Source: Vitrella brassicaformis CCMP3155 (taxonomy: Eukaryota; Protista; Chromerida). From it: a stretch of DNA of 64,000 nucleotides. Location: the NCBI GenBank assembly GCA_001179505.1, contig CDMY01000449.1, positions 10,656 through 74,655 on the forward strand. The letters are read 5' to 3'. Below the pieces are notes generated by a model. That model was given only the letters and a program-made list of their open reading frames with translations. It was not told where the DNA came from and ran no database searches. The position numbers were made by a program, and so were the translations under genes. This document shows, piece after piece, positions 44,401 to 63,693 of this stretch (positions are counted from its first letter, which is position 1; each line of letters opens with the position of its first letter).

Positions 44401-47400
44401 GTCGTTGTCAGGACTCGCTGAGATCGGCTTGCGTCGAAGAGCTGGCCTTGTTGCTGGATAGGTTCCATCGTCAGCAGCTCCCGGACGACGATCCAGCGGC
44501 TGTGTCGGAGAAGCGCGAGTAAGACTGCTTGGCATGCGAATGCACTCATAAATGTCCCATTCATGTATGTATGTATGCATGTAGGCTGTATGGCGCACAG
44601 TTCGCAACCCCACGAAGAAACAAGGCTGCGTCTGATCGTGACGAGCGAGATATGAGATGGTACGTATGTCAGACACACTCGTGCACCACACACACGTTCA
44701 TTCATGCCGTGTGCGAACAGGTTGCTCGAGTTCATCCTCAACGAGGACGAGCAGGCCCGCGCCAAGCATGACGGCTGGCAGAGCGGCACACTGAGCTATG
44801 TACGCAGACACAACACAACGAACACCATCTGGACCGATGCGTGACTTTTTGCACCAAACAGATCATCTGGTGGCTCTCGTCGGGCAGATGCATTGGTGGG
44901 CGCCTGTCGTTTTCGCATACAAAGCACCTTGTGTGTGTGTCTGCATTGTGCCTTGCCCGCCGCCGTGTGTGAATGTGTACCGCAGCTGCGATATGTTTCC
45001 TGGATCAAGCCTTGGCCCAGCTCATTCAGGTGCGGTGATATTTGCCTTGGCCCCATTCAAAGCACAGATTGGCTGTCTCTCTCTCTGTGCTTGGTTGGTT
45101 GGTGGGTTGATGGGTTTGTTGTTCAGGAGGGTGAGCCTGCGTCCGAGAGGGCGAACGAGTCGACCCCAAGTCTCGCCTGGAGGCTCATATCCATCGTAAG
45201 CCAGCCAGCTGACAGCCGCACCCCTTCTCACTGTGTCTTGACGATCACATCTACCTTTCCCTTCCCACGCACAGGTGCTGGACTCGGCCACCGTAGACGA
45301 ACGAAGTCAGCAGCTCCCAAGTTTGCACGAGACGGTACCAGAGACACGCGTGCACACTGTGGGGCTGACAGCTGTGTTTGTATGTGGTGCTGTGGGGGCC
45401 CTCAGGAGCTGAGAGACATCCGCAAGTTCCGGAAAGTCTTGTTGCGATGCTACCAGGTGACATGCTGGTGGAAAGAGACGGACGAAGGAAGCTGCGTCTT
45501 TTCATGTGATCCTCAGCAAACTGAGGCGCTGTGCTATCGATGTGGCAAAGACATCGCCAGGTACCCGAAGCTACATCACACACGAGACGCTTCGCATCCG
45601 TGTGTGGATCTCTCTGGGTGTGTCTGGTGCATACGTGCAGCCACCCTGAGCAGAGCGGAGAAGGTGAGACTTGCCGACCGGTACATGGCGGACTTGTCCT
45701 CTGTGTGTGCCTCCACAGGAGTTGGTATCCCTAGGACCAAGAAATGCCCATTACCGAGTGAATCCTTCTGTGACGGCATCGACAAGGTACATGAATGACA
45801 CGCGCCTCACACGCAAATCCGCTTGGCACGTATGTATCGGAAACCAGGCGAGACTGCGGCATCTGGTGTACAAGCGGATCCAGGACTACAGAGAGCTGAA
45901 GGTGCCTTGGTTGTGATTTCACCTGCTGTTTACCTTTCGGTCTCTGACGTGTCTCTCTTTTGTCATTTTGCGTCTTTGCCTGTGACAGTCGTTGCTCGAG
46001 CTGATGCCCAACATAGGTGCGCGATGGTGGCATCAGTGGGAGCGCACACACATTGGCATGTGCTTGGCATTCGCTCTCTCTGTCACACACAGATCTGATC
46101 CGAGCTGCGCTGCCGCTGAGGGCGTGGGCCGACCAGAAGGTGCCGCTGCTGGTGTACCTCCAGTAAGTGGCACGTGAGTCGACAGTAGATAGTTGATTGG
46201 CTTGTGTCTTATCCAAGGCACACGATGTTCGAGACGTGGCGATGTGAGCCAGGGGCGACGGCTCTCGGCCGTGGTGTCAAGGTGTGCGGGTAAGACTGAC
46301 GAAAGGGCTCATGGCGTGGGATGAGTCGTGTGTTTGTGTGCAGGAAGCATGTCTTCGACACGTTCGGTGGCGGCGATTTTCAGGTCACAGCTCACACACA
46401 CATTCACTCATGGCCACAGACATTTGCCGCGTCGTGCAGATGGATTACGAGGGCATTCATGTCCAGAAGGCAAGAAGGAAAGAAAAAGAAAGACAGACAG
46501 ACAGACAGACAGAGACACAGTGCACTGCGAGTGCACGTGAGTTACTCAGAGACACACAGAGACGGGCACAGTAACGCACCTTTTCCGTCTCAATTAATTT
46601 TTACATGGAATCCCTCTTCAGGCACACCTGCAGGTCGACATCTTACACTCTCATCTATGGCCATCCATCCATCGATTTATCCATCTGCAAACCAACCACA
46701 CGCGACGTTTCCTTGTTTCTTGTTCCAGGAGGCAGACACCAACGCATACGTCAACAGCATCATCAACCTGATCAAAGTCGCAAACAACAAGTTCGAGGGC
46801 CTCAACCAGGTAAAGAAAGGAAGCTGATCAGGTAGAGTGACACCATCAATATCACACTTCAATCCCCCTCCCTGTGTGGGTACGGATGTACATGTATTAG
46901 GTCTACAATGAAAGCGTCTCACCGCTTTCGGCCGAAACCCTCCAGCGTTTTGCCGGTACTGCACAGACATCGTCTTGTAGCCATGGTGCACCTGTCGGTC
47001 TGTCTGTCTGTCTGTCTGTCAGGGATGGCATGGCTTGTTCGAAGCAGCAGTGAGCAGCCCACACTCGACTTCGCTGCTCTGGCTGGTGGCGACGTCCGCA
47101 TTCGGACACTCCTCCAGAGCTTCGCACGAGTACCAAACACGCGATGTTTCCTTTTCTCCGTACACACACAAAGTCAGTGTGGTTTGTGTGCGTGTGTGTG
47201 TGTGTGTGTGTGCTGTCGGACTCAGCTGTGTGACGCGCGGACAAGAGACCTGTACTTCGGCATACTCATCGCTAAGATTTCGGTATCCTTGATCCACATC
47301 CAAACCACTGCATGGACATGTGTGTCGTCTGCTTTACAGGAGGCTCGGTTCGGGGAGAGCGGCAGGAAGATCTTCACAGAAAGTCCTGTCCACCCAAGAT

Positions 47401-50220
47401 CCAAACGGAATCTTGGGAATGAGGACGACTGCCCGACTCTCACAGCTCTTGCAGAATTTGTGTAAGTGGCTGCGACGTGATACGTGACGCGTGAGCTGTT
47501 GTGTCGTGCTGTGACAGGAATGAGGCCCAGCAGCACGTCAGCAAGGACCTCTTTGGCGTGAGTGGCGAGCAGCATTCGACCCATGCTATGAGAAGTAAGT
47601 CGTCAAGAACTCTCGACCAAGCTGAGCACACACAGCACACACAGCACACAATGGTCATATGCGGGCGGCTTTTGTGTCTCTTGCCCATACCCTGAACAAA
47701 AGTGCGTTTGATGAGGTGAGCGGAGCACACGACCATCCATATGCACGTCCTTGGATGATGCACGTTGTCTTCTCCTCCTTCTAGGATTCGCGACAAGATG
47801 TTCACGTTCAGTCGCATTCCCATACTTAGGTTTGCGCCCATCGGGGCGGACGCGCCGGGCATCAGAACTGGCGTGGACGCGCTGGATGCGTTGAAGCAAC
47901 TAGTCAGACACGACAAGCTTTTCCGCGGGTACAACTTTACAAGGGAGACGAGAACAAACAAAGAGATGACACCCATCCGCACGAACATCGTACCGTACTA
48001 TCTGCTGCACTTTGCCTTGCAGGATTCTGAAGTTGGTGTTCGACAGCTCGGCTGAGTCGTATCCGCCCTCGAGAGACGTCGACGGTGACCATTCACACTT
48101 TCAGGCTGCTCGTTTGCCTTTCACGTCTGTCTGCCTGTCTGCCTGCCTGTCTGTCTGTCTGTCTGTCTAGCTGAGAAGCGGCGAAACGGCGCAACGGCGA
48201 ATCAGAAGCCGGTGAGAGGGGTGGATTGCCATGGCATCTCCTTGTTTCTTCGTTTGATTGTGATGGTACTCTGCAGTTTCCGATGTATCGCTTTTCCGAG
48301 GATGGACTCCTCATGTGCCTGAAGCGCATGCTGGGGCTGAGTGAGGATTTGTCCTTCCGCTTTCGGTTCCTAGGTGAGTGGGTCCGAGGGGAGCTTAACC
48401 ACACACAAGCCCCGTCCTTTCAATTCTCTATCGTGGCAGACTCGGACAGCTGCATGGAGTACTGGAAGATCCTCCAGCAGCAGGTAGCAAATGAATGCAT
48501 CGCGTGTGTCTCAATTTGGAGAATGTGTGGATTGCCTGCATGTTGTGCCATCAGGACGACAAGCGCCCATTCATGTGAGTGGCCAGTGCCCACACGTGAG
48601 CCTGTAGCACCGTGGCATGTCTCCCATCGTCAGGTTCGGCCCCATTCCGGGTTTCATCCGCGACATGACAGAGGTAAGCAGCCAGACAAAGGTCACAACA
48701 TCGGGGACAAACACCTGTTGACTACATTCGTCAATTTCTTGCAGCCGGAGCTGTTGAAGTGCAACGAAAATGGCGTCGTAAGCCTCCCGCAGCGAGAGAG
48801 AGCGCTGCATCAAGAGACTTCAACTCAGTCCTCACTGATTTTGATCCCTCAGGTCCAGTGGGACAAACCGGCCCCCAAAAACCGAGGCGGGAGATCAGGT
48901 AACGCTCTCGAGACTGTGTCCGACACTGCACACGGGGCTCACTTTATGCTGTCTTGACGGGCATGCAGATGCGAGGGCTGCGGCCGCTGGCAAGAAACGA
49001 GCACGCAGCCAAGGTAAGGTGGCGGGCGGGGCGTCCACTGCAGCCTTTCCCTGGTGGTGGCGTTGCCGTTCAGCCCACTCCTCGACAGGGGAGCGAGAGC
49101 GAGAGGTCCGACAGCGGAGCGAGAGCGAGAGGCGGTATGAAAGGCGGAAGCAAGGCGGGGATTTGCCTTACGAGGTGACATTTCTCTTCGCCAAACAGGT
49201 CAGTACTGATGCCTACCACGCGCCGTTGACCAGTCGTGAGTGAGGCATGTGTTGCACCTTCACAGATGGCAAGTGCAGAGCGAGTGCTGTATCGCGCCGA
49301 GAGTTCGCGCCTCACTGCCGGTAGAGAGAAAGGACAGAGGAGGGAGGTGTGTCGCGTGTCGATGATGGGTTTTTTCGCTGTCCGTGTACTTCGTTTCAGA
49401 GAGGATGGGCTTCCTTCTCAGCTACGAGCCGCTTACCGTAAAAAGGGAAAGGGAGGGGTATCACCGTGCCCACGACAAGCCTCACGCGCCTTGCGTGTGT
49501 GCGTCTATGTACGGCATCATCAGGTGCACAAGGGCGCTTGGCGCGGGCACCAGGTGGGTGACGAATGCGAGAGAAGACGCGCCGTCTCAGTCTCACATGC
49601 CTGTGTGCTTGTTTTGTTTTTATGCTTATGCAGTATGTCGTCAAACGGAAGAATGCCGGAAGCGGACGGCAGCAGATCGTGCACTCTGAGGCGATCACGA
49701 CGCCTGCTGAGGTGAGCTTGGGCGTTGTGAAGGACAGCAAGAGTCTTTGACCACTTTGACCAGCTACGCTCGCTTCGCTCGCTACGCTCGCTACGCTGTC
49801 AGGTGAAGGAGCTGCCGGAGAGTCATTTTGACGACAAGGCGCTCCTGCTACTGGAGACGTAAGATGCGCAACAATGTGGAGGCCTCGCGTATGCACTTTC
49901 TTTGTCTGCACAGGTCATGCCAGACGGCTCTCAACGCATGTCTGCGAGTTGTGGGCATTGGCCCGGTTAGTGTTGTCGACACCGATGCGGCCGCCCCAGC
50001 TGCTGCTGCTGCTGGTGGTGCTGGTGAGGGTGCTGCTGGTGCAGGTGCTGCAGGTGCTGCAGACGATGTAGACATGGTGCCAGTCGTAGAGGCGGCCGCA
50101 GAGAATGGATCGGAGCAGCAGGATCATGGTGCGTGCAAGAATGGCACTGTGACGATTAATGTGCATTGCTGCTCTCATTGTTGCTCTGTAGTCCCAGAGG
50201 GCGAGGGCGGCGGACAGGCA
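41440..50220 (+). CDS. Large intron-rich orphan gene or genes, no recognised domain
   Basis: Many short exons with canonical sites, e.g. QEADTNAYVNSIINLIKVANNKFEGLNQ|VYNESVSPLSAETLQRFA and DDKRPFM|FGPIPGFIRDMTE|PELLKCNENGV|VQWDKPAPK. Integrity of a single frame not proven. Confidence 0.4.
46522..46590. repeat. 69-bp inverted repeat of 53175-53243 (exon end plus most of an intron of the KDZ gene)
   Basis: 65/69 identity by manual alignment. Confidence 0.9.
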
Positions 50221-50599
50221 ATGAGAGACTAGCCACGGTAGGTTTGACCGAAGGATATTTGCTCAAGTGAGTTGATTCTGATGCAGGTCCGTCGCAAGCC
50301 GAAGTGGTCGGTGGCATGCGCATGCAAGCGCGCTTAGCATCTATGGATTGTCCTTCTTGCTGGATGTGTGCGTTGAGACGTTGACGTAGATTGAGACACA
50401 TTCGGTAGGTAGGTATCAATGGACCGATCCAGCTGCCTCAATCATGCCACGATCATGACGCATCAAAGCCTCGCCACATGGGAAAGTGAAAAAATCGTCG
50501 CGTCTCGCATGAAACAGGCTGACTCACATGGCCATGGCGTCCCTCACTTGTGCTCTCATCAGCAGCCCCTCACCACCCACGTCTTCGAAACAAGCAGTG

Positions 50600-53500
50600 C
50601 ATGCGCCTGAGGGACACACACACACGCACGCACGCACGCACACAGAGAGAGAGAGAGGGAAGAGCGGATGGATGGCGCCTACATGTGCTCGAAGAGCAAT
50701 AGGGTGAGGCTGAGCGCAAGAGAGAAACAAGGGGCGTGTGTCTTCCTTCTTGTCAAGCTTCTGCCGCACACGAATGCTTACTGATCCCAGGTCAGATGAC
50801 ACCACGAGTCGTTGAAGCCTGGGGTTCAAGGACCAAAACACAAATGACACACCATTGCACCATGTGTCAAAGGGCACCATTGAGCCAGCTGAACAGACGC
50901 TGAAACAGACATACATACCCGATCTCGATTCGTCGTATTCAAAGATTCTTTGAATACGATCATGCACAAATTTTTACATACCTCACACACTTGCGTGTCG
51001 ACGTTCTGCATGATGTCTTTTAGCTCGTCTCGATCAGGTCCGAACGTCTCCTGGCATTTCTCTTGGCTGAACACATGAGACACAGCACAGCGAGGCCTTG
51101 CCATTCAGTTTCCTCACTGGTGGAGAGGTTGCTCACTGGTTGTACACGTGCAGCCGATCCAGGCAGTACTTGAGGCCCGCCAGCACGTGGGTCATCTCCG
51201 TCGCGTAAGCGGCCTTCACACACAGACAGCCACACATATACACGTCGGGCTGTTCGCTTTGCGTCTGTTATGACCTCGGCTTGGTTCTTCGCGTACGCTG
51301 CCATCATACAGCCGTTGTCATAGCATACGCACTCCACCTCCGGATGGCGCCGTTTTCTAAAGGACAGAAAGCTCATAGACAGGAGAATACGGTACCAAAC
51401 TGAAGATGTCGGCTTCAATCCTGTACATTTCCGCACACAGGAAGTGAGCTGAGCAAACACAAAAGACAGACACATGTGTGGTCGATGCATCGTTGTCTCT
51501 CCGCGACCTTGCGTGAGTGATTCGGAGGCAGCCATCATTGAGAATCCCAGGACCTCGCCGCACGGGCGCATGGCGACCAGGATTCCCGCCGTTGCCTTGT
51601 TGGTGTCTGTGCTCTCCTTGTCCCTGACGCGTGCATGGAGACAAGGAAACATCGCGTGGCTTTCAAGTGACGCAATTGACCTACGTCCTGCAGCCGGTGA
51701 GATTTGTTGTCTTGTCGATGCCGGCCAGCTCTGATGACAAAGGGAGATAGACACATTGCATCAGGCCAGGGTGGGCCGCTCTATGCTTCTCACGAGAAGA
51801 CAGGTGGACAAGCGAGTCATCTGCCGAGCCGCGCCTTCCTGGGCTGCCAGCTGGAGAAACGGCGAAAAGAAAAAAATCGACATCTCAACAACAGCTCCAC
51901 TGTGTCTTACTTCGTCGTCTTTTCGACGCATCAGACTCCGATCTCTTGCCTCTTTTCACGGACGAGACCTGCCAGCTCCTTGACGTGTGAGCTCTTGGCT
52001 TTGCCTTACTTGTTGTTGTTGAAGTACGGAACTCATTCAACGCATACCAGCCGCCTGACACACACAGTGCCAGATGTGTGCGCGAACCATCCGCTTGACA
52101 GACCTCTTACCGACGTATTTTGATCGGTCGATCAATTCCTCCATGGACACGCCTTTGACTGTCGTTTGATCCTTGAGAATGACGTCATAGAAAAGTTCCT
52201 GCGTAATAGACATCATATGTTTTGCCGGACGCATGTCTCGACCATGTCTCCGCGAATGTCATTGGCTTTTCCTGCCTGCCGACTCCCTCCCCTGTATGTG
52301 CGCCCCACCTGTGTGCCGTCCTCGGCCACCCGGCACTGCTTGGAGGTGAGCCTCTCCACTCTTCGAGCCATCCCATCTTCGTCGACATCAGCATCATTCA
52401 ACTGAAGGCGCGACATCTCGATGGCCTACCGGCGAGAGACAGGCACTCATGGCGGTTCAGGGACGCACAGATAAATTGATCAGACTCACAATGAGGCAAT
52501 CCTCGCAAAGCTTGGACCCACTGACTGGACGTCCCAGACAAGGAAGCAGCATGGACCGCCCCTGATATCCGAGATGAGGCATCGCAGAATATCATCGAAG
52601 CGGTCTGAGCTTACGAGCTCCTTGCTGTAGAGCTCTGAGAGGCCCTCAGTCGCACAACGGGGGATGGTTAGCTTCCTGCCGCCATCGATAATAACCACTG
52701 AGTGCACACCCCATCAAAGGTACATCGCTCGTCCTCTTTGAACCCATCTATTCCCTAACCCTTGCTGCAGTGCTCGTGACTGCACTGATGCTCGGCAGTC
52801 AGCTCCTCAAAGTCCTGTACAGACAGACACACACGCAATCGACAAAGCAGGGACACAACGGATTTGGAGGGATCAACTTTCTTGACTCTAGCCACCAGTA
52901 GTCGCTACCAGTGAGTACGCGTCGAGGAAGTCGCTGATGTTGACTGCCATGTCGATGTTGACAAAGGAGTTTGGTGCTATGAGCTTGACCATCTCTGTGT
53001 TGGCGGAATCGTGCTCACGACATGCATTGACTGTCGCCCGATTCAACCGACGCTGAGACACCAAAAATGTGGTTCGTGTCTGTGCATATCTTTTTGCTAG
53101 CCTGTTGACTGACCTCTGCGAAACGCGCCAGTCGATACAATGTGAACGCCCTCGTGAGCTGCAACAATCCATTTAGACGGAAAAGGTGCGTTACTCTGCC
53201 CGTCTTTGTGTGTCTCTGAGTGACTGACGTGCACTCGCAGTGCGCCCTTTGACAGCCCAGTGCGCCGCACTTGCCCAAACACAAACTCTTCCTCCAGGCA
53301 ATCCTGCGGAATGAAAGCAGACACAATGCTCTCGTCTCACTGTCTGGCCAGTGAGGGACAGTCCGGACCTGGAAGAGGTACGCATTTGCAAAACCTGAAG
53401 GGAGGAAAAAGAAGCATGTGAAGCCCCATCCACGGCCTGGGATATCCTCACTGACCGTAGAATGACACTTGACTGGAACAAACCATTCAGTCAAGACATG

Positions 53501-54477
53501 AAGACAGGGCCCTTTTGCTTCCGTTTTGCTTACCTCGTGTGCTGCAAGAGCATGAGTTGGTCCAGCATCGTTGTATCAAATGCCCTCTTGGTCGAGATCA
53601 TGAAATGCCTGTGGACATTGTGGTTTAAGGGAAAGCTATCTATTCATAGTATGCGATGATTCACAGCCATTGTGGAGACCTCAGCTCTATTTGGTTGCCA
53701 TTCTGATCTTTTCCGCCAGTAAATCCCCCGAAAATCGTCTGGAAGAAAGAAGAAACGGGCAAGCAGCAAATAAGACGGTGCGAAAAAATGCATCTGAGCG
53801 CCACAAAGCTTCTGACCTGCAAATCGTTTGGGAACAGGTGGAGGCGGCTGCACAGTAGAAAGGCTTTCCACAGTTAAGAAAGAATGGGAGTGACTGAAGG
53901 AAGCCTCTTCTAACACCGACCGTTTCTGCTGCTGGTAAAACACCGATGTGTCGAAGTCATCCTCTTCACCGTTGGCATCCTCCTTCTCGTCCGCTTCTTC
54001 ATCTTGGCCCCCCTCATCTCTGCTCCTTGGGATGGTGTGGAACTGAGTCCGTGACGACACACACAGATGCATTGAAGAGAATAGATGGCGCCCGACTGAA
54101 GTGCAAAATCAGTTTGTTACATTCTGATAGTGTCTTGAGCGGCAGCCGTTTCGCGTACACACTTTAAGAACCGCTAGACCATGCAGCTGCCCAACTGGCG
54201 TCTCGATCAGGACGTCCATGCACTTGCGATACGACAGGTTACCGCTGCACTCGAGGCACACATCGCCTGAAACAAAGACGTGCAGATGTGCTGCTTCCTG
54301 TGTCTTTCTTGGTATGTCACCTGGGTAGGATAGAATAGTGTAAGGAAGCGCTTTTGCTGTTTTCGCCTCCTCGTAGCGTTCTCTTCTGGAACTCGAGACC
54401 GCGGGGAAGATATTTCTGGGGACAACAATGCGCTGGGAAATACAGGTGCATGTGCTCGGTGGGGTTGCTGTTCTCAC
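50600..54477 (-). mobile_element. Intron-rich KDZ (Kyakuja-Dileera-Zisupton) transposase gene with an N-terminal CxC cysteine cluster; element termini not identified
   Basis: Canonical splicing yields YPG|DVCLECSGNL...VLIETPVGQLHG...KVCTRNGCRSRHYQN (CxC), HFMISTKRAFDTTML, HQCSHEHCSK|VVIIDGGRKLTIPRCA, GILVAMRPCGEVLG...SESLTQ, VCYDNGC, DRLHVYNH|QEKCQETFGP, VDTQVCE|RLFSWLN. This is the KDZ motif order as recalled, with catalytic D, D, E. Confidence 0.88.
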
Positions 54478-54549
54478 TGGATCAAGACGTTGAGAGACGG
54501 CTCACTCACACCTGATCCAATTTGTCGGAGCGAAGAGCCCGCAGCGACA

Positions 54550-56160
54550 TGAAAGGAGAAGAATTATCTAATAAACGGTGGTCTCAAGCTGACCTAGCTT
54601 CTCCTGCAGAGGAATGCAGGCCTGCTGGCTGCAAACACACACAATCAACCAAGAAGCGTCAGATCTGCCATCCAAGTGCAAATGCAAATGCCCTCTCAAT
54701 TGGTCCCTTTCTGCACTGACACTGCTGCAAATGGACACACATCAGGCGCGGCAATCCCATGGCGTCATCAGAAAGATGCCCACGTACCTTCAATGGGGGT
54801 GTGCGACGGCAAGCGCAGCAGACATTCCACGAGTGGGCTGTACTGCGTGAGGATGGCCGCAACGCCTTTGATCTCGTCAAGGGAAAGTTGTTTTGGTTCC
54901 ATTCTTCGCTCAGCCTCTTGCAGCGTTGGTTACTGCAGCGGTCTTCCACGACTCAGGGAAGGACACACAAACACATAGATACACACACACGCACACCCCG
55001 GGAGCTGGGGAGCGTCAACGAGGAGGGGAGAGAAGGGAGCCCCAAATCATGCAGGCCCCAACACGATTTTGGGGCCGCCGCGAAGGCCGTGTCGCATACG
55101 CTGCACATGTCTTGTCAGGCAGACGAATGCATGGACGTCATCGTTTGTGGCGATGACTCGCACGCCACGGGGAGAGAAGATGCTGTTGAAGACAAGAAGG
55201 AGTCCACACCAAGGTGGGTGTAGTGTCAGGTCTCGATTACCCCCGCTCGATTCGTGTGTGGCCCTCTTACAGACGTTCTCCACGGCTGAAGGCCATCTAC
55301 AAGAGTGAACAGGAGCCTGTCACGGTGGATGGCCCGCCACCGCCTCTCACTGATTCCGAGGTGGACACACACACGACCAACGAATCGGATGCACATCTTC
55401 GGACGATGTGGTGCTTTGCTTCTACTGGTCCCAGCTTCGTTCGATGGAGAGGATGTTTCGTTCGATGGTGCTGAAGGTCTATCGCAAGGCTGGCAAGCGA
55501 TGGCTGAAGTGGCTGCTGCGGGAGGTAGACAGGCGATGGCTGAAGGCGAAGCTGAAGCCGTTTGAGCGCGACATCCCCGAGGGCGCCTTCCTGGATTTTT
55601 GTAGACGACAAAACACGACCGTGACGAAAGGCAAACAAACACAACTGTGGTTGCTGCTGTTTGTGTGAATTCATGTGCTCCTACAGCACTGAAGAACGGG
55701 TATTTAGTTAAAGAGAAGAAGCGGTCAGGAAGTGGGACTCTCATAGGCACCCCCGACACGAAGATACAGGCGGGAGACTCTCGCTTTGAAGGCATTTTCC
55801 TGGATCCGGCGAAGACATACGAAAGAACATTTGAGTCTGTGCTGTATCATCTGAGTGCGAATCAGAGCAGCGCCCTTCGTTTGAGACAGCGGCCTATGTC
55901 GTTTGTCGAGTTTGAAGCGCTGAGACACACGCAAGTAAGCGAGACACGCATCAATGTCTGCCAAACGGATAAAACTCCCTGTCTGCCAGCCTGCAAAGAG
56001 CCGAGCGAAAGCGAAACAGGGCCCGCTACCGCTGGCAGCCAAAAATGCAGAACTGCAGGTGACAAATTGGATTGCAATTGTGCAATTCCTGCGTGTGACT
56101 GATGTGGAAAATGTCGGTCAGAAAGCGGCCAAGGACTACCGAGAGAGGCTCTTTTAAGCT
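54550..56160 (+). CDS. Hypothetical gene or relic divergent from the KDZ transposase
   Basis: Protein-like segments MASSERCPRTF...WLLQR, MERMFRSMVLKVYRKAGKRWLKWLL..., LKNGYLVKEKK...FEALRHTQ|gtaagc. Frame connectivity unclear. Confidence 0.35.
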
Positions 56161-56519
56161 GAGACGCGACGATGCGCGTGATTCTGCTGGCAGCCGCAAT
56201 GAATAGCGTGTCAATGCAGCCGTGAAGTTTGTGTTTGTCTGCAGTCGAGGGGTCTGTAGGCCCTGGGTTGTTGGATAGGTGAAGACATTTGAGACATTGG
56301 ATGATGCGAACGGTCAAAGCTCTGGCAGATCGTCAACGAGAGCATTGCGCACATACTCGGCACGCAGGAGAATTCGCTCGTGTACGTAGTGTACGCACGT
56401 ATACGACAACGCGACACGAGCCCGTGCAAAGACCACTAGCAGTGCAAAGCTCATGGGCACTGAGTAAAGCCATGATGGCCATAAGTGTCTTGTCGACGAA
56501 CACACATGACCAGTCTTCA

Positions 56520-56523
56520 TCTA

Positions 56524-56558
<35 letters not shown>

Positions 56559-57684
56559 GTATGGATTGCTTTTGACTCAGGAGTTTGCGTTTCTTCTCAC
56601 TGCTGTGTCTGTCCTCAATGTTGGAAGGGAACGGCATCCATCAGTGTCGACACACGTCGCGGTTGAACGAAGGCTAGGCCTGAAAGGCAAGAAGTACACA
56701 CACATCGATCGATCATATACGTACGAGAACACAGACACATGCATGTATACGTATACGTATTATGTATACCATGGTACGTATGTATGTATGTACGTATGTA
56801 TGTGTGCGCATTGTGTATGTAGTGATTGGGGCGATGCGCTGTATGTATGTGATTCACCGTACGTACGCACGTTACACACACGAAACTTCACTCACCGGCT
56901 GCCTCTCGGTCGGCTGCTGCTTCTCAATCACTCGTCTATCAGAATCAATCCGGCCGCATTCATTGACTCTGCCGCGGGATCGATGCCAATCGTTGGTTGA
57001 GTCACTCCTCGCCTCCTTGGATGAGTGAGAACGACAGAGGACAGGGGCGTGCTTCCTTGTCTGCTTGGCTAGAAAGAGTGAATGAAGCAGCCGCGTCAAG
57101 GCTTTGTCCATCCAAGCACGGCCGATCCACCACCACCTGACACACAAACAGAGGGGAAGCAACGCGATCGATCGGTCGTCTGGCTCTGGCTGCTTGCTGC
57201 CTGCATTCTCTTGCCCTCTCTCTCTCTCTATCTCTCTCTCTCTCTCTCTCTCTCGGTTGCGTGGTTCAAGTGACTGACCTGCTGCTGCCCGGTCTGTCTG
57301 TTGTTCCTCTTTAGCATGCTGAGCTTTGGGGGTCGATAAGGCAGTCGCGAGCCAGCCAAGCAACCATCTGCAATGGCAAGCCATCCATCCACACGGATCA
57401 GAAAAGCCGCGAGCTGCCTCCATGGAATGGATGAGGCCGGGGGGAAAGGACGGCCGAAGCGATGAAAAGGCGCATTCGCCTCAATGAATGCTGCAGACAT
57501 GATCCGCGGTGTCTCCATTCATTCACCTGTGTGTCGAGCTGTCTTCCATCGTTGCCATCCCCAGGTAAGTCACCAGGTACTTAAGCCGCCGTCCGTCCGC
57601 CGGTCTGTTGACGGGCACATGCTCTGCTCTCCACACTCCAACACACAGATACAGCCAGCCAGCCAGCCAGCCAGCCACCTGCTC

Positions 57685-57717
<33 letters not shown>

Positions 57718-58440
57718 CAGGTACCAGGAGATCGATCAGCGCCGGGGCAGCCAGCCCCGGCCCTGAAGGCTATCGGAAACAGCCTTGCTTGGTGCTCGAT
57801 GACTGACCGATGGGTCGATCTGCCAGCCCGCTTTGTCATCGTCTTGCTATCGCGGCAGGCAGGACAGCACCTACACGAGAGAGAGGCAGACACACACAAC
57901 ACAGGACGGCCCATTCATCAGTTGCGCAGGAATGGACTCGCCGTCGTTCCCTTACCTCGTCTGTCAATGAGGCAGACACTTAGCGGCGTCCGTCATCCTC
58001 AATACGCAGGCAGGCAGGCAGGCAGGCATCCGCCCGGCCGCACCGCTCTCCTCGTATGACTCCATTCCGTCCTTTCATTTGCTTCGCCGGTCACACCTGG
58101 ACACAGACGCACGGACAGAGAAAAGAGGGAAGCCTGTGGATCTCTCTGTCGGTTTGCTTCTGGAAAGATCTCAGCGGATGGCGAGCTTAGCTTGCAGAGG
58201 TCGCTGCAGAAGGCCACCTAGGGTGCTCCGTGAAACCGTCGCTGCAGAAGACAGATCTCCGGACCAAAACCACACGCCTCGCCCGGCAGGTAACACGCAG
58301 ATCCACTGGCGAAGGAAGCGCTTCATTTCGTCACCTCTCTGCCTTTCTCATTCATGCAGCTTCCTTGCAGCAGACGTCCATCCAGGCGGCCTCCTCATCC
58401 TGAAACCACAAGCAACACAATGCGCGACACTGTCAGGTGA
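56520..58440 (+). repeat. Repeat R, copy E (~1.9 kb, ungapped)
   Basis: Reverse complement of copies C and D; colinear with copy B. Confidence 0.9.
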
Positions 58441-61437
58441 CAACAACAAACAGCGCCGTGCCATCCTTTCGCCGCGCGGCATTGTTTCGACCTTTTTGCT
58501 GCTACCGTCTTGGTGCAGGTACCGCCGTGGCTATCCGGGTCAGCGTGATGGCCAGTCGACGACAGTGTTGCAGTTCTACCTCAACCGCATCGCGTCGACG
58601 CCTTACGGCACCAAGATAGAGGCCATCCTGGCGGACTGTCGCGGGGACTCCGAGCTGCTCGCGAGGCGCCTATTCGGGTGCATTCAGGTGTGCGCGACAG
58701 ACAGCCAGACAGACAGACAGACAGACAGACAGAACGCATCCCCATTTCCCGTCACGTCAGTCACTGCAACGAACGGTCGCTGTCTTGTTGTGTGTGTGTC
58801 CGTCAGTGGCTGTTTCCCATCCGTGAAAAGGGCCTGGCTGGCGATGCACCGCCTCTGACCAAACCTGAGGCCGAGTACATGGCGACGGACGAGTGGGTCA
58901 AGGACAGAGTGCTTCGCGCGTACAAGATGATTCTAGGTCAGTCAATCAGGCAACAAGCGGGCGACACACCGCAGACACGGAAGGGGCTGCCACACACATC
59001 CGCACTGTCATCTCTGTGCTGTTGGTCGTGTGCTTCGTCCAGACTTCTATGGCTTCCGTCTGGCGTGTGACGAAACCGGTGAGGTCGAGCGTGCCGCCGA
59101 GTCGGAGTACCCCCGGAGGTTCAACCACGTGGTCATGGTGCGGCACATTACCCGCATCATCAAGTCCCTCGGCGAGCTGGGATATCAGCACTTCCAAAGG
59201 CCGCTCGTCGAGACCCTCATCAGCGGTGGGCGGGTGGGTGACGGATACATGGACGTCTGTGTGTGCATGTATTGTGGCTGGGTGCCTGTGTGCAGAGATC
59301 TATGACAGTTGCCCGGCGCATCTCGACATCGTGTCTCTCCGCATGGCGAAATCGGCCACGCGATTGTGGGTGCATCTTGTTAGGTACGGTAGACATACAC
59401 ACACACACACACACACATACACCACCCAGAGACCCTCACTGATGCGTGTGCGATTCTCAGGGACGAGAATGAGCGTCAGGACCTCTGCCGCATGGTCTTC
59501 CACAAGTATCGAGAGGACATACGCGAGCCGGGAGACGACTTCTCACTCACCGGTACACAGACGGACACACAGACATGTACGACCCACCAATCCGATACGT
59601 GGCCTCCCCTCCTCTGTTCTTCTCCCTGTCGCCCCCACCCATCCGTCAGTGGCCGCCCCGCCCCCTCCTTTGCCCACACCACACGACACCACGAGCAGCA
59701 AAGCAGTTGGCCTGCTCGACGGCCTCCCTGTCTATGCGGCCGCCAATGGGTGCTTCAAGGCGCGGATCGATGGCGAGGTGCGCACACTGCCTGCGGCAGC
59801 AAAGCCCAAGATCGTGATGTTTGTGGACGAGCAACAGCATCCGGCGCAGCACAAACCAACCATGCAGGTCATCGTCGAGGCTCTTACTGGTAAAGGCCGC
59901 ATCCGGTCGGACACACACAATCGCTCTGTGACCTCGTCATTCGTTCGTCTTTGTATCTTTGGCAATGTATTTATGCAGGCAAGGTTTTCACGCTGTGTGT
60001 CGCCCCGTCTGACACCATCGAGGACGTCAAGGCCGACATACAGCACCGTGAGGGCACCCCGCCCTTCCAGCAGCTGGTGCTTTTAGGAGAACAAACGGTT
60101 GGAGAACTGGTAGGGCCGGAGAACGAACGGACCCTGGCGTTCTACGGCATCCAGGACAATGACATGCTGCGCCTCGTCCAGTTCATGCAGATCTTCGTCA
60201 AGCGTCTTGATGGTATGCACCCTTGAACATCCCGCAACCGAAAGCGTGCCACTCTCCTGGTGCATTCAGGCATGACCATCACGGTGCAGGCCTGTCGGCA
60301 TGAGACCGTTACGGACCTTAAGGCGAAGATAAAGGAGCGTGAGGGCATCCCGACCGACCAGCAGCGACTCATCTTCGCCGGTCGGCAGCTGGAGGACGGC
60401 CGCACCTTCGACTACTACAACATCCAGGAGGAGTCTACGGTGCATCTGATGCTGAGACTGAGGGGGGGCATGTTCCATGAGACCAGGTGAGGCCGACTCG
60501 GCGCACACAGTGACGACCAACACAGCCGTGCACACCTGGCTGCAATCCCTGTGTGTTTGGTGCAGCGGCCGTCACGGCTTCAACGCCTCTAGTGCGATGG
60601 AGTCAGGCCAAGACGACCAACAGGTGACCTATACCACACAGTACACTGAGGGGGGGCGAGGCGTCCATCTGTGTGGTCCCCGTACTGCAGGAGGGACCTG
60701 ACACACACCAGCAGCAGCCGGCCAGCAATGGGGGAGCAGGTGGGTGGGTGAGAGGGGGGGGGGNNNNNNNNNNNNNNNNNNNNNNNNNNNNNNNNNNNNN
60801 NNNNNNNNNNNNNNNNNNNNNNNNNNNNNNNNNNNNNNNNNNNNNNNNNNNNNNNNNNNNNNNNNNNNNNNNNNNNNNNNNNNNNNNNNNNNNNNNNNNN
60901 NNNNNNNNNNNNNNNNNNNNNNNNNNNNNNNNNNNNNNNNNNNNNNNNNNNNNNNNNNNNNNNNNNNNNNNNNNNNNNNNNNNNNNNNNNNNNNNNNNNN
61001 NNNNNNNNNNNNNNNNNNNNNNNNNNNNNNNNNNNNNNNNNNNNNNNNNNNNNNNNNNNNNNNGGGGGGGGGGTGGGGGGCGGCCGGCAAAGTGTCATCC
61101 TGTTTTGTTGCCAATCTCAGGTGGTGCAGACGACGAGGAGGATGGCAACGACCAGCACCAGATGTCCAGCGAGAAGAAGAAGCGACCCCCGGCCAAGCCG
61201 CTGTTCACTCGGTCTGCCATCGCTGCTGGTCTGGTGCGCCCCAGGAAGACCGCCAAGGACGACAAGGCAGAGCGGGTGAACAACAACAGGAAGCCTGGAA
61301 ATGGGACGGCGGGGACCGTGGCGTGTGGGGGCGGCATGACGCGCAAGATGGCCTGCAAACGGGCGGCAGAGCAGACTGGTACCGCGGCCGATCGGCGGGC
61401 CAGCAAACGCACAAAGAAAGAGAAGGGGCTGCTGTAA
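58360..61437 (+). CDS. OGFr-N plus ubiquitin-like plus ubiquitin-domain protein, copy 2
   Basis: TMRDTVR|YRRGYPG...QFYLNRI...GCIQ|WLFP...RAYKMIL|DFYGFRL...[13 protein letters not shown], then a Ubl exon, then MTITVQ...[33 protein letters not shown]...[13 protein letters not shown]. The last exon (61120-61437) lies beyond a gap, so its link is inferred. Confidence 0.8.
60764..61063. other. Assembly gap (300 N) flanked by G runs
   Basis: N run. Confidence 1.
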
Positions 61438-61913
61438 GTGAGGCATTGAGGGAGTGAAGCCAGCAGCCAGGAGGCAGACAGACACATGCCTTCTCGTTTA
61501 TGAGTTCACCGACAGTTTTTTGTATGCCGTCACTCTCTGTCATGGTTGTGTGCTAGGGTGTCGGGTGGGGCGTGCCGCCTTTTTTGTCCTTCTATGATGT
61601 CTTATGTGTCTGTGTGGTGGCAAGTGTATTTGTATCCATCGGAGTGTGCGTGTGGGGGGCGTTTGCTGGGCCCCGGAATGAAGGCCGATTGTGTGTTCCG
61701 AAGATATGTGAGTAAGATATCTGAGTGTTTCTGTGTTGGCGGTCTATGTGTGTGCGAATCTGTGTTCTCTGGCAGAAAACGAACCAAGAGTCAGCAAATT
61801 CGTTCTGATCCGATTCGAACAACAAAGAATGTCATGCATTGAATCACACTTGTACAACGATGCAACATCTCACACGCACGTACACCGGCTCATTCGTCCT
61901 CCTGCCTGCCAAG

Positions 61914-63693
61914 TTAGTGTGTGTGGGTGGACGCGATGAACGGCATGAGGGGGCACTCTCCCTGTGGGTATCGCTGCATCGAAGAGGCCCTCCCGCACAC
62001 GCGGCACCGCTTGTCGTGTTCGATCATCAACACGTGCAGGGACGGCTTCAGCGACTCGGGCACTCTGAACGACATGCCACACACACAGACAGACACAGAG
62101 AGGCACCACAGACAGCAGCAACATGCATCATTTCTGTGACAGATTGCAGCCGTACGCTGTGTGCGTACCTTCTGTTGAGGTGTTCGTATGTCTGCAGTCG
62201 TGTGGCTGACGGCGGCACCCACTGCAGCCTCAGGGCCACCTTGTGCACGTGTGTGTCGACGGGGAACTCCGGCCGGTTGAGGCCGAACATCATCACACAC
62301 GCCAGCGTCTTGGCCCCCACACCCTTGTAGCTGAACCACACACCACAGACAGACAGACAGACGATGACATTCCTCGGCGGAGGCTCTTCCCGTGTTCCTC
62401 TCCCCTCTGTGGCCATCGACCCACCTGAGAAGGTGTCGCTTCACGTCCTCGTCAGGCAGGTCCCGCAGATACTCGAGCGACGGCTCGCCACCATCCTGCA
62501 CACGCCACACAGACAGACAGGCCAACAGACAAAGCCATCGACTGACACGAGAAGCGCCATGGGGAATTGGTGGGGGCTGTCAGTGAGCTCACGTGGTGGC
62601 CCTGGTCGAGTACGTCCTGCAGGATGACTCTCATGCGCTTGACCTTGGTGGTCGCCAGGCCGCCCCGCACTATGGTGGCCTCCACGGCCGAGGGGTCGGC
62701 GTCCAGCACAGACCGCCACGTCGGATACGATGCCTGCACACACACACAGACATTGAACACAGAAATGAGAGATGTGACGACGGTGCAGCTGGCTGTGTGT
62801 TGTGTCACCTTGAGGCGCTTGAACATCTCATCCGACACGACGTCAGTCGTATTCTGATGCACAGACAGACAGACAGACAGACAGGAGAGAGATGTCGTGT
62901 CCCCGTCCTTCACCCCTCTAGCCATGGTCAATTGTACCTGTGAGAGGATGACCCGAACGAGCAAATCCAATAAGGGTCCCCCGGCCAGCCACTCGCCCAC
63001 TGGCGAGCCCCTGGCACTCGATGACGACTGTGGCTGTGCCGCCCTCTGGCTGGTCAGTATGTGTCCGTGTATTTGTTGCAGGACGTCATGGACGATGCGG
63101 CAGTCATAGGTGGAGGGGTGCGGCCACAGAGGGAACGGCTCCTCGTCCAACACCTTCTTGGCCCACGGCTCATCTGCTGATCCACCTTCGCCCATGACAT
63201 CACCGTCATGAGTCGGTGCCGTGGCCCTCTTCCGTCTGGTGCCTCGCCGCTGCTTTCCTCCAGCCTTGCTGAGCCCACCCCCATTATCGACATCGCTCCA
63301 GCCCGTTGAGGACGCCACGGACATCCTCTCAATGTCACCACCAGCATCATGATCAGGGGACTCACGATGCTCCCTCCTATCAGCAGCACTCATCGCAGCT
63401 CCTCTGCTCGCGCTGTCCCTGACACACTGGCCGTCTAATTGCCTCTCCAATCTCATGGATCCCTGCCTCATGCCGTGCCGCACGCCGGCGGGCGGCAGTT
63501 GCTGCGCTCTTCTGTCGTCATCTCGATATCTGAACGCGTCGAAGTCGAAGGGCACCGCAGCCGATGAGTCCCCGGCGTCATGCCCCCCCTCGTTGTGGCT
63601 CAGTGAGCAACCACCGTGCGGCGGGCTGGTTTTTGGTCGCGGCTTGGTTCGGCGCCGCTTCGGAGGTGGTAGAGGGGCAGGAAAGGATGCCAT
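61914..63693 (-). CDS. HhH-GPD superfamily (endonuclease III-related) DNA glycosylase with a disordered N-terminus
   Basis: LLDLLVRVILSQ|NTTD...; GGLATTKVKRMRVILQ; HhH motif YKGVGAKTLACV with Lys; FPVDTHVHKVALRL with catalytic Asp; LHVLMIEHDKRCRVC. Confidence 0.9.

What the first reader, a model, noticed from the sequence alone, without database searches (positions are those of the whole stretch)
50600..54477. Apparently intact KDZ transposase with roughly 18-20 spliceosomal introns in an alveolate
It is invisible in the ORF track because it is split into tiny exons. Manual splicing of the motif-bearing exons recovers the CxC cluster and the catalytic series IIDGGRK (D at ~52684), CYDNGC (~51317), DRLHVYNH (~51140-51160) and TQVCERLFSWL (~50985), with no stop needed in those exons. 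KDZ transposases are established mainly in fungi, animals and some algae. A heavily intronised, catalytically complete copy in a chromerid is either an active new lineage or a domesticated gene. The middle exons (51740-52480) were not fully resolved, and no TIRs or TSDs were found by eye.
Basis: partly seen in the sequence, partly recalled or inferred. Interest (0 to 1): 0.85.

Follow-up and report, generated by a model that had tools for sequence, protein, structure and literature searches.

The report
Intron-rich KDZ transposase gene in Vitrella
A transcribed, intact gene for a KDZ-type cut-and-paste transposase, split by 31 tiny introns, sits as a single copy between ordinary genes of the alga Vitrella brassicaformis; it looks more like a transposase kept by the host than a jumping element, and public databases already carry it as an unnamed protein.

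Summary
RNA contigs of two public runs show the splices, and the exon lengths fit the positions of a 3.2-kb transcript contig exactly. The model equals a public protein of Vitrella brassicaformis CCMP3155, apart from a 4-nt microexon that the annotation missed. That protein passes Pfam's KDZ threshold (PF18758, E 1.5e-8, 35 bits against a cut-off of 26.6).

No CxC Pfam model hits. Only language-model neighbours point to a CxC5-like N-terminus. The first catalytic D rests on the motif alone.

There are no terminal inverted repeats, no target-site duplications, no second copy in the window and no close relative in 1.84 billion representative proteins. Flanking genes lie 229 and 338 bp away, and DNA-run depth is flat.

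Best reading: an immobile, probably domesticated KDZ-derived gene that keeps its catalytic motifs (about 0.55). A low-copy, Kyakuja-like element without inverted repeats is not excluded.

It is a new member of a known kind, of modest interest. The scan noted this stretch before and, unchecked, two other KDZ-like genes elsewhere in this genome.

The parts
50570..54902 (-). Coding region of the KDZ-family gene: 32 exons, 31 GT-AG introns, 729 aa
   Evidence: Model built from RNA joints and contig anchor positions. It equals public protein P0001 except for 8 residues.
54788..54902 (-). First coding exon (ATG at 54902). The 5' UTR runs further right and overlaps the 5' end of the divergent neighbour's transcript.
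   Evidence: The X6 contig covers 54788-55211 continuously and then carries the neighbour's + strand introns. The donor is AAG|GTACGT at 54788/54787.
54721..54724 (-). 4-nt microexon CAGT, flanked by ttgcag| and |gtcagt. It keeps the reading frame and is absent from the public annotation.
   Evidence: The X6 contig has 'ACTG' between 54628 and 54788 (table 5c). The only AG-CAGT-GT site in that interval is at 54724-54721. Without it the frame hits a stop.
53456..53472 (-). 17-nt microexon
   Evidence: X1 loose ends at 53395 and 53454 read into it from both sides (table 7).
54121..54266 (-). Exon with the N-terminal Cys/His cluster (CLECSG...C...VCTRNGCRSRH), aa 95-143. Candidate zinc-binding CxC5-like module.
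   Evidence: Read directly from the sequence. Language-model neighbours of aa 1-345 are CxC5 clusters, score 0.96. No Pfam CxC hit.
52615..52697 (-). Exon with VVIIDGGRK; candidate first catalytic Asp D364 (codon 52686-52684)
   Evidence: Motif read from the sequence. It lies outside the stretch aligned to the Pfam profile, so its role is inferred.
51911..52054 (-). 144-nt exon encoding a basic Ser/Lys/Arg-rich stretch (KRGKR...KRRR), a possible nuclear localisation signal
   Evidence: X1 contig is contiguous over 51911-52053. The localisation role is inference.
51508..51623 (-). Exon with TAGILVAMRPCGEVLGFSMMAASE, where the Pfam KDZ match begins (profile position 69)
51275..51356 (-). Exon with CYDNGC; candidate second catalytic Asp D621 (codon 51319-51317)
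   Evidence: Inside the PF18758-aligned stretch. Coordinates.
50982..51213 (-). Two exons with DRLHVYNH-QEKC (H657, H661, C665) and NVDTQVCE; candidate catalytic Glu E689 (codon 50984-50982)
   Evidence: Joints 51066/51137 and 50899/50982 are in the RNA. The motifs lie inside the PF18758 match. Coordinates.
50233..50569 (.). 3' UTR and intergenic stretch up to the convergent 2349-aa gene; no transposon end found
   Evidence: Gene calls of the public assembly. The transcript contig reaches 50286 and runs about 175 nt further. No TIR or TSD.
54903..55130 (.). 229-bp stretch between the two divergent start codons, carrying the overlapping 5' UTRs; no transposon end found

Best explanation
This is a single-copy, transcribed and correctly spliced gene of Vitrella brassicaformis. 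It encodes a 729-aa protein of the KDZ (Kyakuja-Dileera-Zisupton) family of DDE-type cut-and-paste transposases.

Shown: the gene model, its transcription and splicing, KDZ family membership, and the absence of recognisable transposon ends or close copies.

Inferred: the protein has three parts.
- An N-terminal Cys/His-rich, CxC5-like zinc module that would recognise DNA or chromatin.
- A basic stretch that would take the protein to the nucleus.

The gene is wedged between host genes, shares an overlapping head-to-head transcription start region with its neighbour, has host-like short introns at very high density, and has no ends to act on in cis. I therefore read it as an immobilised, probably domesticated transposase gene that the host keeps under selection. 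It may still be able to bind or cut DNA in trans.

Confidence that it is an expressed, intact KDZ-family gene is about 0.95. Confidence that it is domesticated rather than mobile is about 0.55. The confidence figure given for this explanation is for the whole statement.
For: - RNA contigs of runs X6 and X1 show the splices. DNA runs X2 and X5 show none, so there is no retrocopy.
- Exon lengths fit all positions at which the transcript contig is anchored, and the ORF has no stop.
- The model is the same as public protein P0001.
- PF18758 KDZ: E 1.5e-8, 35 bits, above the 26.6-bit cut-off, reaching profile position 215 of 217, so the C-terminal core is complete.
- ESM Atlas neighbours by features and by structure are KDZ, CxC5 and CxC6 clusters.
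- No second copy in the 64-kb window.
- Only the protein itself turned up among 1.84 billion representatives and in three word-index searches.
- No inverted repeat above chance in the flanks: best score 19, against shuffles of 20.5 +/- 2.6.
- No 7-9 bp direct repeat next to CA..TG ends.
- Neighbouring genes lie 229 and 338 bp away.
- The X2 DNA contig runs unbroken from inside the gene into the neighbour at flat depth 13.4.
- Keeping 2190 nt of ORF and 62 splice sites intact without close copies argues for selection (inference).
Against: - No orthologue was found, so purifying selection and age are not measured.
- The first catalytic D and the RNase H fold are not verified. The Pfam match starts at profile position 69, and the single-sequence AlphaFold model was unusable (pLDDT 33.5).
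- Kyakuja elements have no TIRs, only CA..TG ends and 7-bp TSDs (PMC12730594). Lack of TIRs therefore does not prove immobility, and the ends of a single copy cannot be defined.
- Unchecked scan notes say other transposase genes of this genome also carry introns, so intron richness alone is weak evidence of domestication.
- Copy number in the whole genome was not measured.
Confidence: 0.55

Rival explanations
1. It is the transposase gene of a still mobile, very low-copy KDZ transposon. This could be Kyakuja-like, with no TIRs, or larger and including neighbouring genes as cargo. Its intron-rich gene would simply reflect how genes look in this genome.
For: The catalytic motifs are intact and the gene is transcribed. 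Kyakuja families lack TIRs (PMC12730594). Unchecked scan notes report other spliced transposase genes and two more KDZ-like genes in this genome.
Against: No close paralogue appeared in the protein libraries, although the Vitrella proteome is in them. There is no TSD with CA..TG ends in the flanks. DNA depth is flat and the DNA contig is unbroken across the upstream boundary. The 5' end overlaps the neighbour's transcript, and the intergenic space is only 229 and 338 bp.
Confidence: 0.25
2. It is a dead, immobilised transposon copy that drifts neutrally and has by luck not yet been broken. Its transcription would be read-through or promoter sharing with the neighbour.
For: No orthologue and no measured selection. 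The head-to-head neighbour could drive its transcription. In X1 its depth is 5-10 times lower than the neighbour's.
Against: A 729-codon ORF and all 31 introns with GT-AG ends are intact, including 4-nt and 17-nt microexons whose loss would shift the frame. The Pfam core is complete to its C-terminal end. No trace of transposon ends remains, which implies age, and age without selection should have broken the frame (inference).
Confidence: 0.12
3. It is not a transposase relative at all. The motifs and the Pfam hit would be chance in a Cys/His-rich protein.
For: The Pfam match covers only the C-terminal two thirds of the profile. No CxC model hits. No PDB relative was found.
Against: The score is above Pfam's curated threshold, and the sub-fragment alone gives E 6.8e-9. 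Independent language-model and structure neighbours are KDZ/CxC clusters. The motif order D..D..HxxxHxxxC..E fits the family.
Confidence: 0.02

Closest known systems
KDZ (Kyakuja-Dileera-Zisupton) transposases, Pfam PF18758 (Iyer et al. 2014; Bohne et al. 2012; Kojima 2025, PMC12730594)
   Same: Passes the family's Pfam threshold. It has the same order of motifs: a D in a DG-type strand, a TG..C motif, YD.GC, H-x3-H-x3-C, and CER.[FW]S. My knowledge of the fungal consensus is from memory. It also has a Cys-rich N-terminal region.
   Different: Found in a chromerid alveolate, whereas the papers I could search describe fungi, animals, green algae and nematodes. It has 31 introns. It is a single copy with no TIRs or TSDs and no TET/JBP partner gene, and no Pfam CxC model hits.
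CxC5/CxC6-type KDZ proteins of rotifers and basidiomycetes (ESM Atlas clusters)
   Same: These are the nearest clusters by language-model features for the N-terminal half (score 0.96). For the C-terminal half the feature score is 0.84-0.91 and the structural TM-score is 0.52-0.55.
   Different: There is no alignment or E-value behind these matches, and Pfam PF18718 and PF18721 do not hit. No sequences were available, so no tree was built.
HMGXB3, the vertebrate gene thought to derive from a Zisupton/KDZ transposase
   Same: A possible parallel: a single-copy, intron-containing host gene that keeps KDZ-type domains. That HMGXB3 is a domesticated gene is recalled from memory.
   Different: The HMGX3 cluster carries CxC4 and matches only weakly (TM 0.40). 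The protein here has no HMG box. Homology beyond the shared superfamily was not tested.
Domesticated transposases of other alveolates (PiggyMac of Paramecium, PMC6143343)
   Same: A transposase-derived, intron-containing, single-copy host gene with catalytic residues retained, in an alveolate.
   Different: It belongs to a different superfamily (piggyBac). No programmed DNA elimination is known in chromerids. This is an analogy only.

Membership tests
KDZ transposase family (PF18758) | Match to the Pfam KDZ profile above its gathering score | tested here: met
   P0001: E 1.5e-8, 35.0 bits against cut-off 26.6, aa 560-712 on profile 69-215/217. The fragment 540-721 alone gives E 6.8e-9. The public database also lists PF18758 for it.
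KDZ transposase family (PF18758) | Second catalytic D, H-x3-H-x3-C motif and catalytic E in the C-terminal core | tested here: met
   CYDNGC (D621), HVYNHQEKC (H657, H661, C665) and VCERLF (E689) lie inside the Pfam-aligned stretch. The family consensus I compare them with is from memory.
KDZ transposase family (PF18758) | First catalytic D on the first strand of an RNase H-like fold | tested here: inconclusive
   IIDGGRK (D364) is a plausible motif but lies outside the Pfam match, and fragments 330-480 and 330-560 give no hit. The AlphaFold single-sequence model has pLDDT 33.5. Atlas structure neighbours align residues from 340 onwards with KDZ clusters, but without residue detail.
KDZ transposase family (PF18758) | N-terminal CxC zinc-chelating cysteine cluster (CxC1-7) | tested here: inconclusive
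   No Pfam CxC family at E up to 10. Language-model neighbours of aa 1-345 are CxC5 clusters at 0.96, with all ten best in one family. Cys/His clusters are visible at aa 98-138, 350-357 and 395-409.
Mobile KDZ transposon (Zisupton, Kyakuja or Dileera element) | Terminal inverted repeats (Zisupton) or CA..TG termini (Kyakuja) with 7-8 bp target-site duplications (PMC12730594) | tested here: not met
   Only microsatellite-based inverted repeats within 47000-58500. The best inverted match between the flanks is no better than shuffles. No 7-9 bp direct repeat beside CA..TG. The ends of a single copy cannot be mapped with certainty.
Mobile KDZ transposon (Zisupton, Kyakuja or Dileera element) | Several related copies in the genome | tested here: inconclusive
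   One copy in the window and no close relative in the protein libraries. DNA depth is flat. The whole genome could not be searched. Scan notes mention two other, unchecked KDZ-like genes.
Domesticated transposase gene | Intact ORF, transcription, and loss of transposon ends at a fixed host locus | tested here: met
Domesticated transposase gene | Orthologues at the same locus in related species, under purifying selection | not testable with these tools
   No orthologue was found in the libraries. No tool here searches the Chromera genome or other Vitrella strains.

The most novel reading that the evidence does not exclude
A catalytically competent KDZ (CxC5-type) transposase has been domesticated as a nuclear DNA-cutting or DNA-binding host factor in the closest photosynthetic relatives of Apicomplexa. 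It would be the first domesticated KDZ gene outside vertebrates, in a superfamily for which no biochemistry or structure exists.
Probability: 0.4. Interest if true: 0.5.

Novelty: new member of a known kind. Interest (0 to 1): 0.35.

Why it matters
KDZ transposases are a poorly studied superfamily. I found no solved structure by sequence and know of no biochemistry. In the papers I could search they are described from fungi, animals, green algae and a nematode.

An intact, expressed, single-copy KDZ gene in a chromerid extends the host range to alveolates. If it is domesticated, it adds a second case beside vertebrate HMGXB3 and offers a tractable protein for testing what KDZ enzymes do.

The gene is also a striking example of intron density: 14 introns per kb of coding sequence, including 4-nt and 17-nt microexons. 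The 4-nt microexon corrects the public gene model.

None of this overturns current views. The protein is already in public databases with an automatic KDZ label.

Tried and rejected
- Hand splicing by eye gave stops. It was wrong at four places: exon 51448-51427 is only 22 nt, 52054-51911 is a single exon, exon 53394-53369 is only 26 nt, and the 5' exons were misplaced.
- Pfam on ten unspliced, stop-free pieces gave nothing, because the exons are too short.
- The word-index protein search with the 246-aa piece found nothing.
- The word-index search with P0001 regions 340-721 and 555-721 found only the protein itself.
- The exhaustive HMMER search could take only an unspliced 246-aa window piece. 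It returned the gene's own protein and one repeat artefact, P0002.
- AlphaFold without an alignment gave pLDDT 33.5. I ran no fold search on it because the matches would be meaningless.
- The PDB sequence search found nothing.
- The metagenome scan found nothing.
- The Iyer et al. 2014 paper is not held in the library, so the family's motif consensus and the link between CxC types and clades are quoted from memory only.
- All-against-all comparison of the 31 introns showed no shared introner family.
- I did not paste the spliced 729-aa protein into any tool. The public 721-aa protein P0001 stood in for it.
- No phylogeny against Kyakuja, Dileera, Zisupton or HMGXB3 was possible, because no homologue sequences could be fetched.
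Full report
**What is in the sequence**

The stretch carries a gene on the minus strand. Read unspliced, it has no long ORF, and my first hand-spliced model still contained stops. Public sequencing runs settled the structure.

Runs X6 and X1 hold spliced contigs. Runs X2 and X5 hold the unspliced genomic sequence with no joints. The joined form is therefore RNA, not a retrocopy.

Twelve minus-strand joints are listed explicitly, all CT..AC on the + strand and so GT..AG on the gene's strand. X1 loose ends prove a 17-nt microexon at 53472-53456. An X1 contig shows that 52054-51911 is a single exon.

The 3214-nt X6 contig runs from the gene into the divergent + strand neighbour, whose introns are GT..AG on the + strand. 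The two transcripts therefore overlap head to head, and the assembler merged them.

Between 54628 and 54788 the X6 contig carries four extra letters, ACTG. On the gene's strand this is CAGT. The only AG|CAGT|GT site in that interval is at 54724-54721. This is a 4-nt microexon, and without it the frame runs into a stop.

**The gene model**

I enumerated GT-AG exon chains that fit the distances between the contig's anchor positions and that keep the frame open. The parsimonious chain uses the strongest splice sites.

- The model has 32 exons and 31 introns of 53-110 nt (median 64), all GT-AG, in phases 11/10/10.
- The ATG is at 54902, the stop ends at 50570, and the protein is 729 aa.
- Summed exon lengths reproduce every position at which the contig is anchored to the window (850, 995, 1445, 2720).
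- The model is identical to the public protein P0001 (721 aa) except for eight residues, SHTPIEAV. These come from the true first donor plus the 4-nt microexon, which the annotators missed.
- Two exon chains are not seen directly.

**Identity**

The exhaustive HMMER search could take only an unspliced 246-aa piece of the window. It returned the gene's own annotated protein P0001 and one repeat artefact.

P0001 is an 'unnamed protein product' of Vitrella brassicaformis CCMP3155, encoded on contig CDMY01000449.1 of GCA_001179505.1.

Pfam gives PF18758 (Kyakuja-Dileera-Zisupton transposase) at E 1.5e-8 and 35 bits. The gathering score is 26.6. The match covers residues 560-712 on profile positions 69-215 of 217. 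The C-terminal fragment alone gives E 6.8e-9.

| Motif | Residue | Codon in window |
|---|---|---|
| IIDGGRK | D364 | 52686-52684 |
| CYDNGC | D621 | 51319-51317 |
| DRLHVYNH-QEKC | H657, H661, C665 | 51150-51054 |
| VCERLFSWL | E689 | 50984-50982 |

D621, the His/Cys motif and E689 lie inside the Pfam-aligned core. D364 does not, and fragments around it hit nothing. The first catalytic Asp therefore rests on the motif alone.

No CxC Pfam model hits at E up to 10.

The ESM Atlas gives independent, weaker support:
- For aa 340-721 the nearest clusters by features and by predicted structure are KDZ, CxC5 and CxC6 families. The best feature score is 0.91, and the structural TM-scores by query to the CxC5/KDZ and CxC6 clusters are 0.52-0.55.
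- For aa 1-345 all ten best named neighbours are CxC5-type clusters, at score 0.96.

These are leads without alignments.

AlphaFold without an alignment failed (pLDDT 33.5), so I ran no fold search. No PDB chain is related by sequence.

**Mobile or not**

- There is no second copy in the 64-kb window.
- No relative other than the protein itself appeared among 1.84 billion representatives, in three word-index searches or in JGI metagenomes. The Vitrella proteome is in those libraries. Any paralogues, including the two other KDZ-like genes that unchecked scan notes report in this genome, must therefore be distant.
- Inverted repeats around the gene are only microsatellite matches.
- The best inverted alignment between the two flanks scores 19, against 20.5 +/- 2.6 for shuffles.
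- No 7-9 bp direct repeat lies beside CA..TG ends.
- The public annotation places a 229-aa gene 229 bp upstream (divergent) and a 2349-aa gene 338 bp downstream (convergent).
- The X2 DNA contig runs unbroken from inside the gene into the upstream neighbour at flat depth 13.4.
- Intron density is about 14 per kb of coding sequence. This is higher than my estimates of 5-11 for the neighbours but of the same kind: short introns of about 64 nt.
- The 31 introns are unrelated to each other.

Two points temper this. Kyakuja elements have no TIRs, only CA..TG ends and 7-bp TSDs, while Zisupton has TIRs and 8-bp TSDs (PMC12730594). And unchecked scan notes say that other transposase genes of this genome also carry introns. 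Missing TIRs and many introns are therefore suggestive, not decisive.

**Reading**

The gene is an expressed, intact member of the KDZ family (about 0.95).

It keeps a 2190-nt frame, 62 splice sites and two frame-critical microexons. It has no close copies and no ends, and it shares its start region with a host gene. I therefore think it most likely an immobilised, domesticated transposase gene that retains its catalytic motifs (about 0.55).

The inferred mechanism has three parts: a CxC5-like zinc module binds DNA or chromatin, a basic KRGKR...KRRR stretch directs nuclear import, and a DDE core binds metal.

The rivals are:
- a still mobile, very low-copy, Kyakuja-like element (about 0.25);
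- a neutral relic transcribed from the neighbour's promoter (about 0.12);
- a chance resemblance (about 0.02).

**Novelty**

KDZ elements are described from fungi, fish and other animals, Chlamydomonas and Pristionchus. My searches found no paper linking them to alveolates, but that search was weak. The protein already sits in public databases with an automatic PF18758 label. This is a new member of a known kind and of modest interest. The corrected gene model with a 4-nt microexon is a small addition.

The scan had noted this same stretch before (s1-216008).

Noticed in passing
window 53160-53243 (minus-strand gene) and 46522-46605 (+ strand, inside the 2349-aa neighbour gene): An 84-nt stretch is 89% identical between the two genes, in sense orientation in both. 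Here it covers intron 53228-53159 plus the last 15 nt of the upstream exon, including the donor GTGCAC|GTCAGT. The other copy has GTGCAC|GTGAGT inside what looks like an intron. It could be a small intron-carrying repeat or a case of intron duplication.
   Followed up: partly
window 51631-51658 (-), 47138-47165 (+), 46701-46720 (+): A 22-28 nt motif, CACGCGATGTTTCCTT.TCTCC, recurs. In two of the three places it lies just before an intron's 3' end. It may be a shared branch-site or polypyrimidine element, or a short repeat.
   Followed up: no
window 54788-55211: The transcripts of the KDZ gene (minus) and the 229-aa gene (plus, CDS 55131-56157) overlap at their 5' ends. One RNA contig of run X6 carries introns of both strands, which points to a shared bidirectional start region.
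   Followed up: partly
window 54721-54724 and public protein P0001: The public gene model lacks the 4-nt microexon and uses another donor, so the public protein is 8 residues short (SHTPIEAV).
   Followed up: yes
window 58178-63693 (L001 308-5823): Upstream lie a gene with OGFr_N plus ubiquitin-like domains and an HhH-GPD DNA glycosylase gene (precomputed Pfam). No link to the KDZ gene is shown. I mention them only because fungal KDZ elements travel with DNA-base-modifying TET/JBP genes.
   Followed up: no
window 50607-50666: A (GT/GC)n microsatellite inside the last intron breaks DNA-run contigs. Its translation caused the spurious repeat-protein hit P0002 in the HMMER search.
   Followed up: yes
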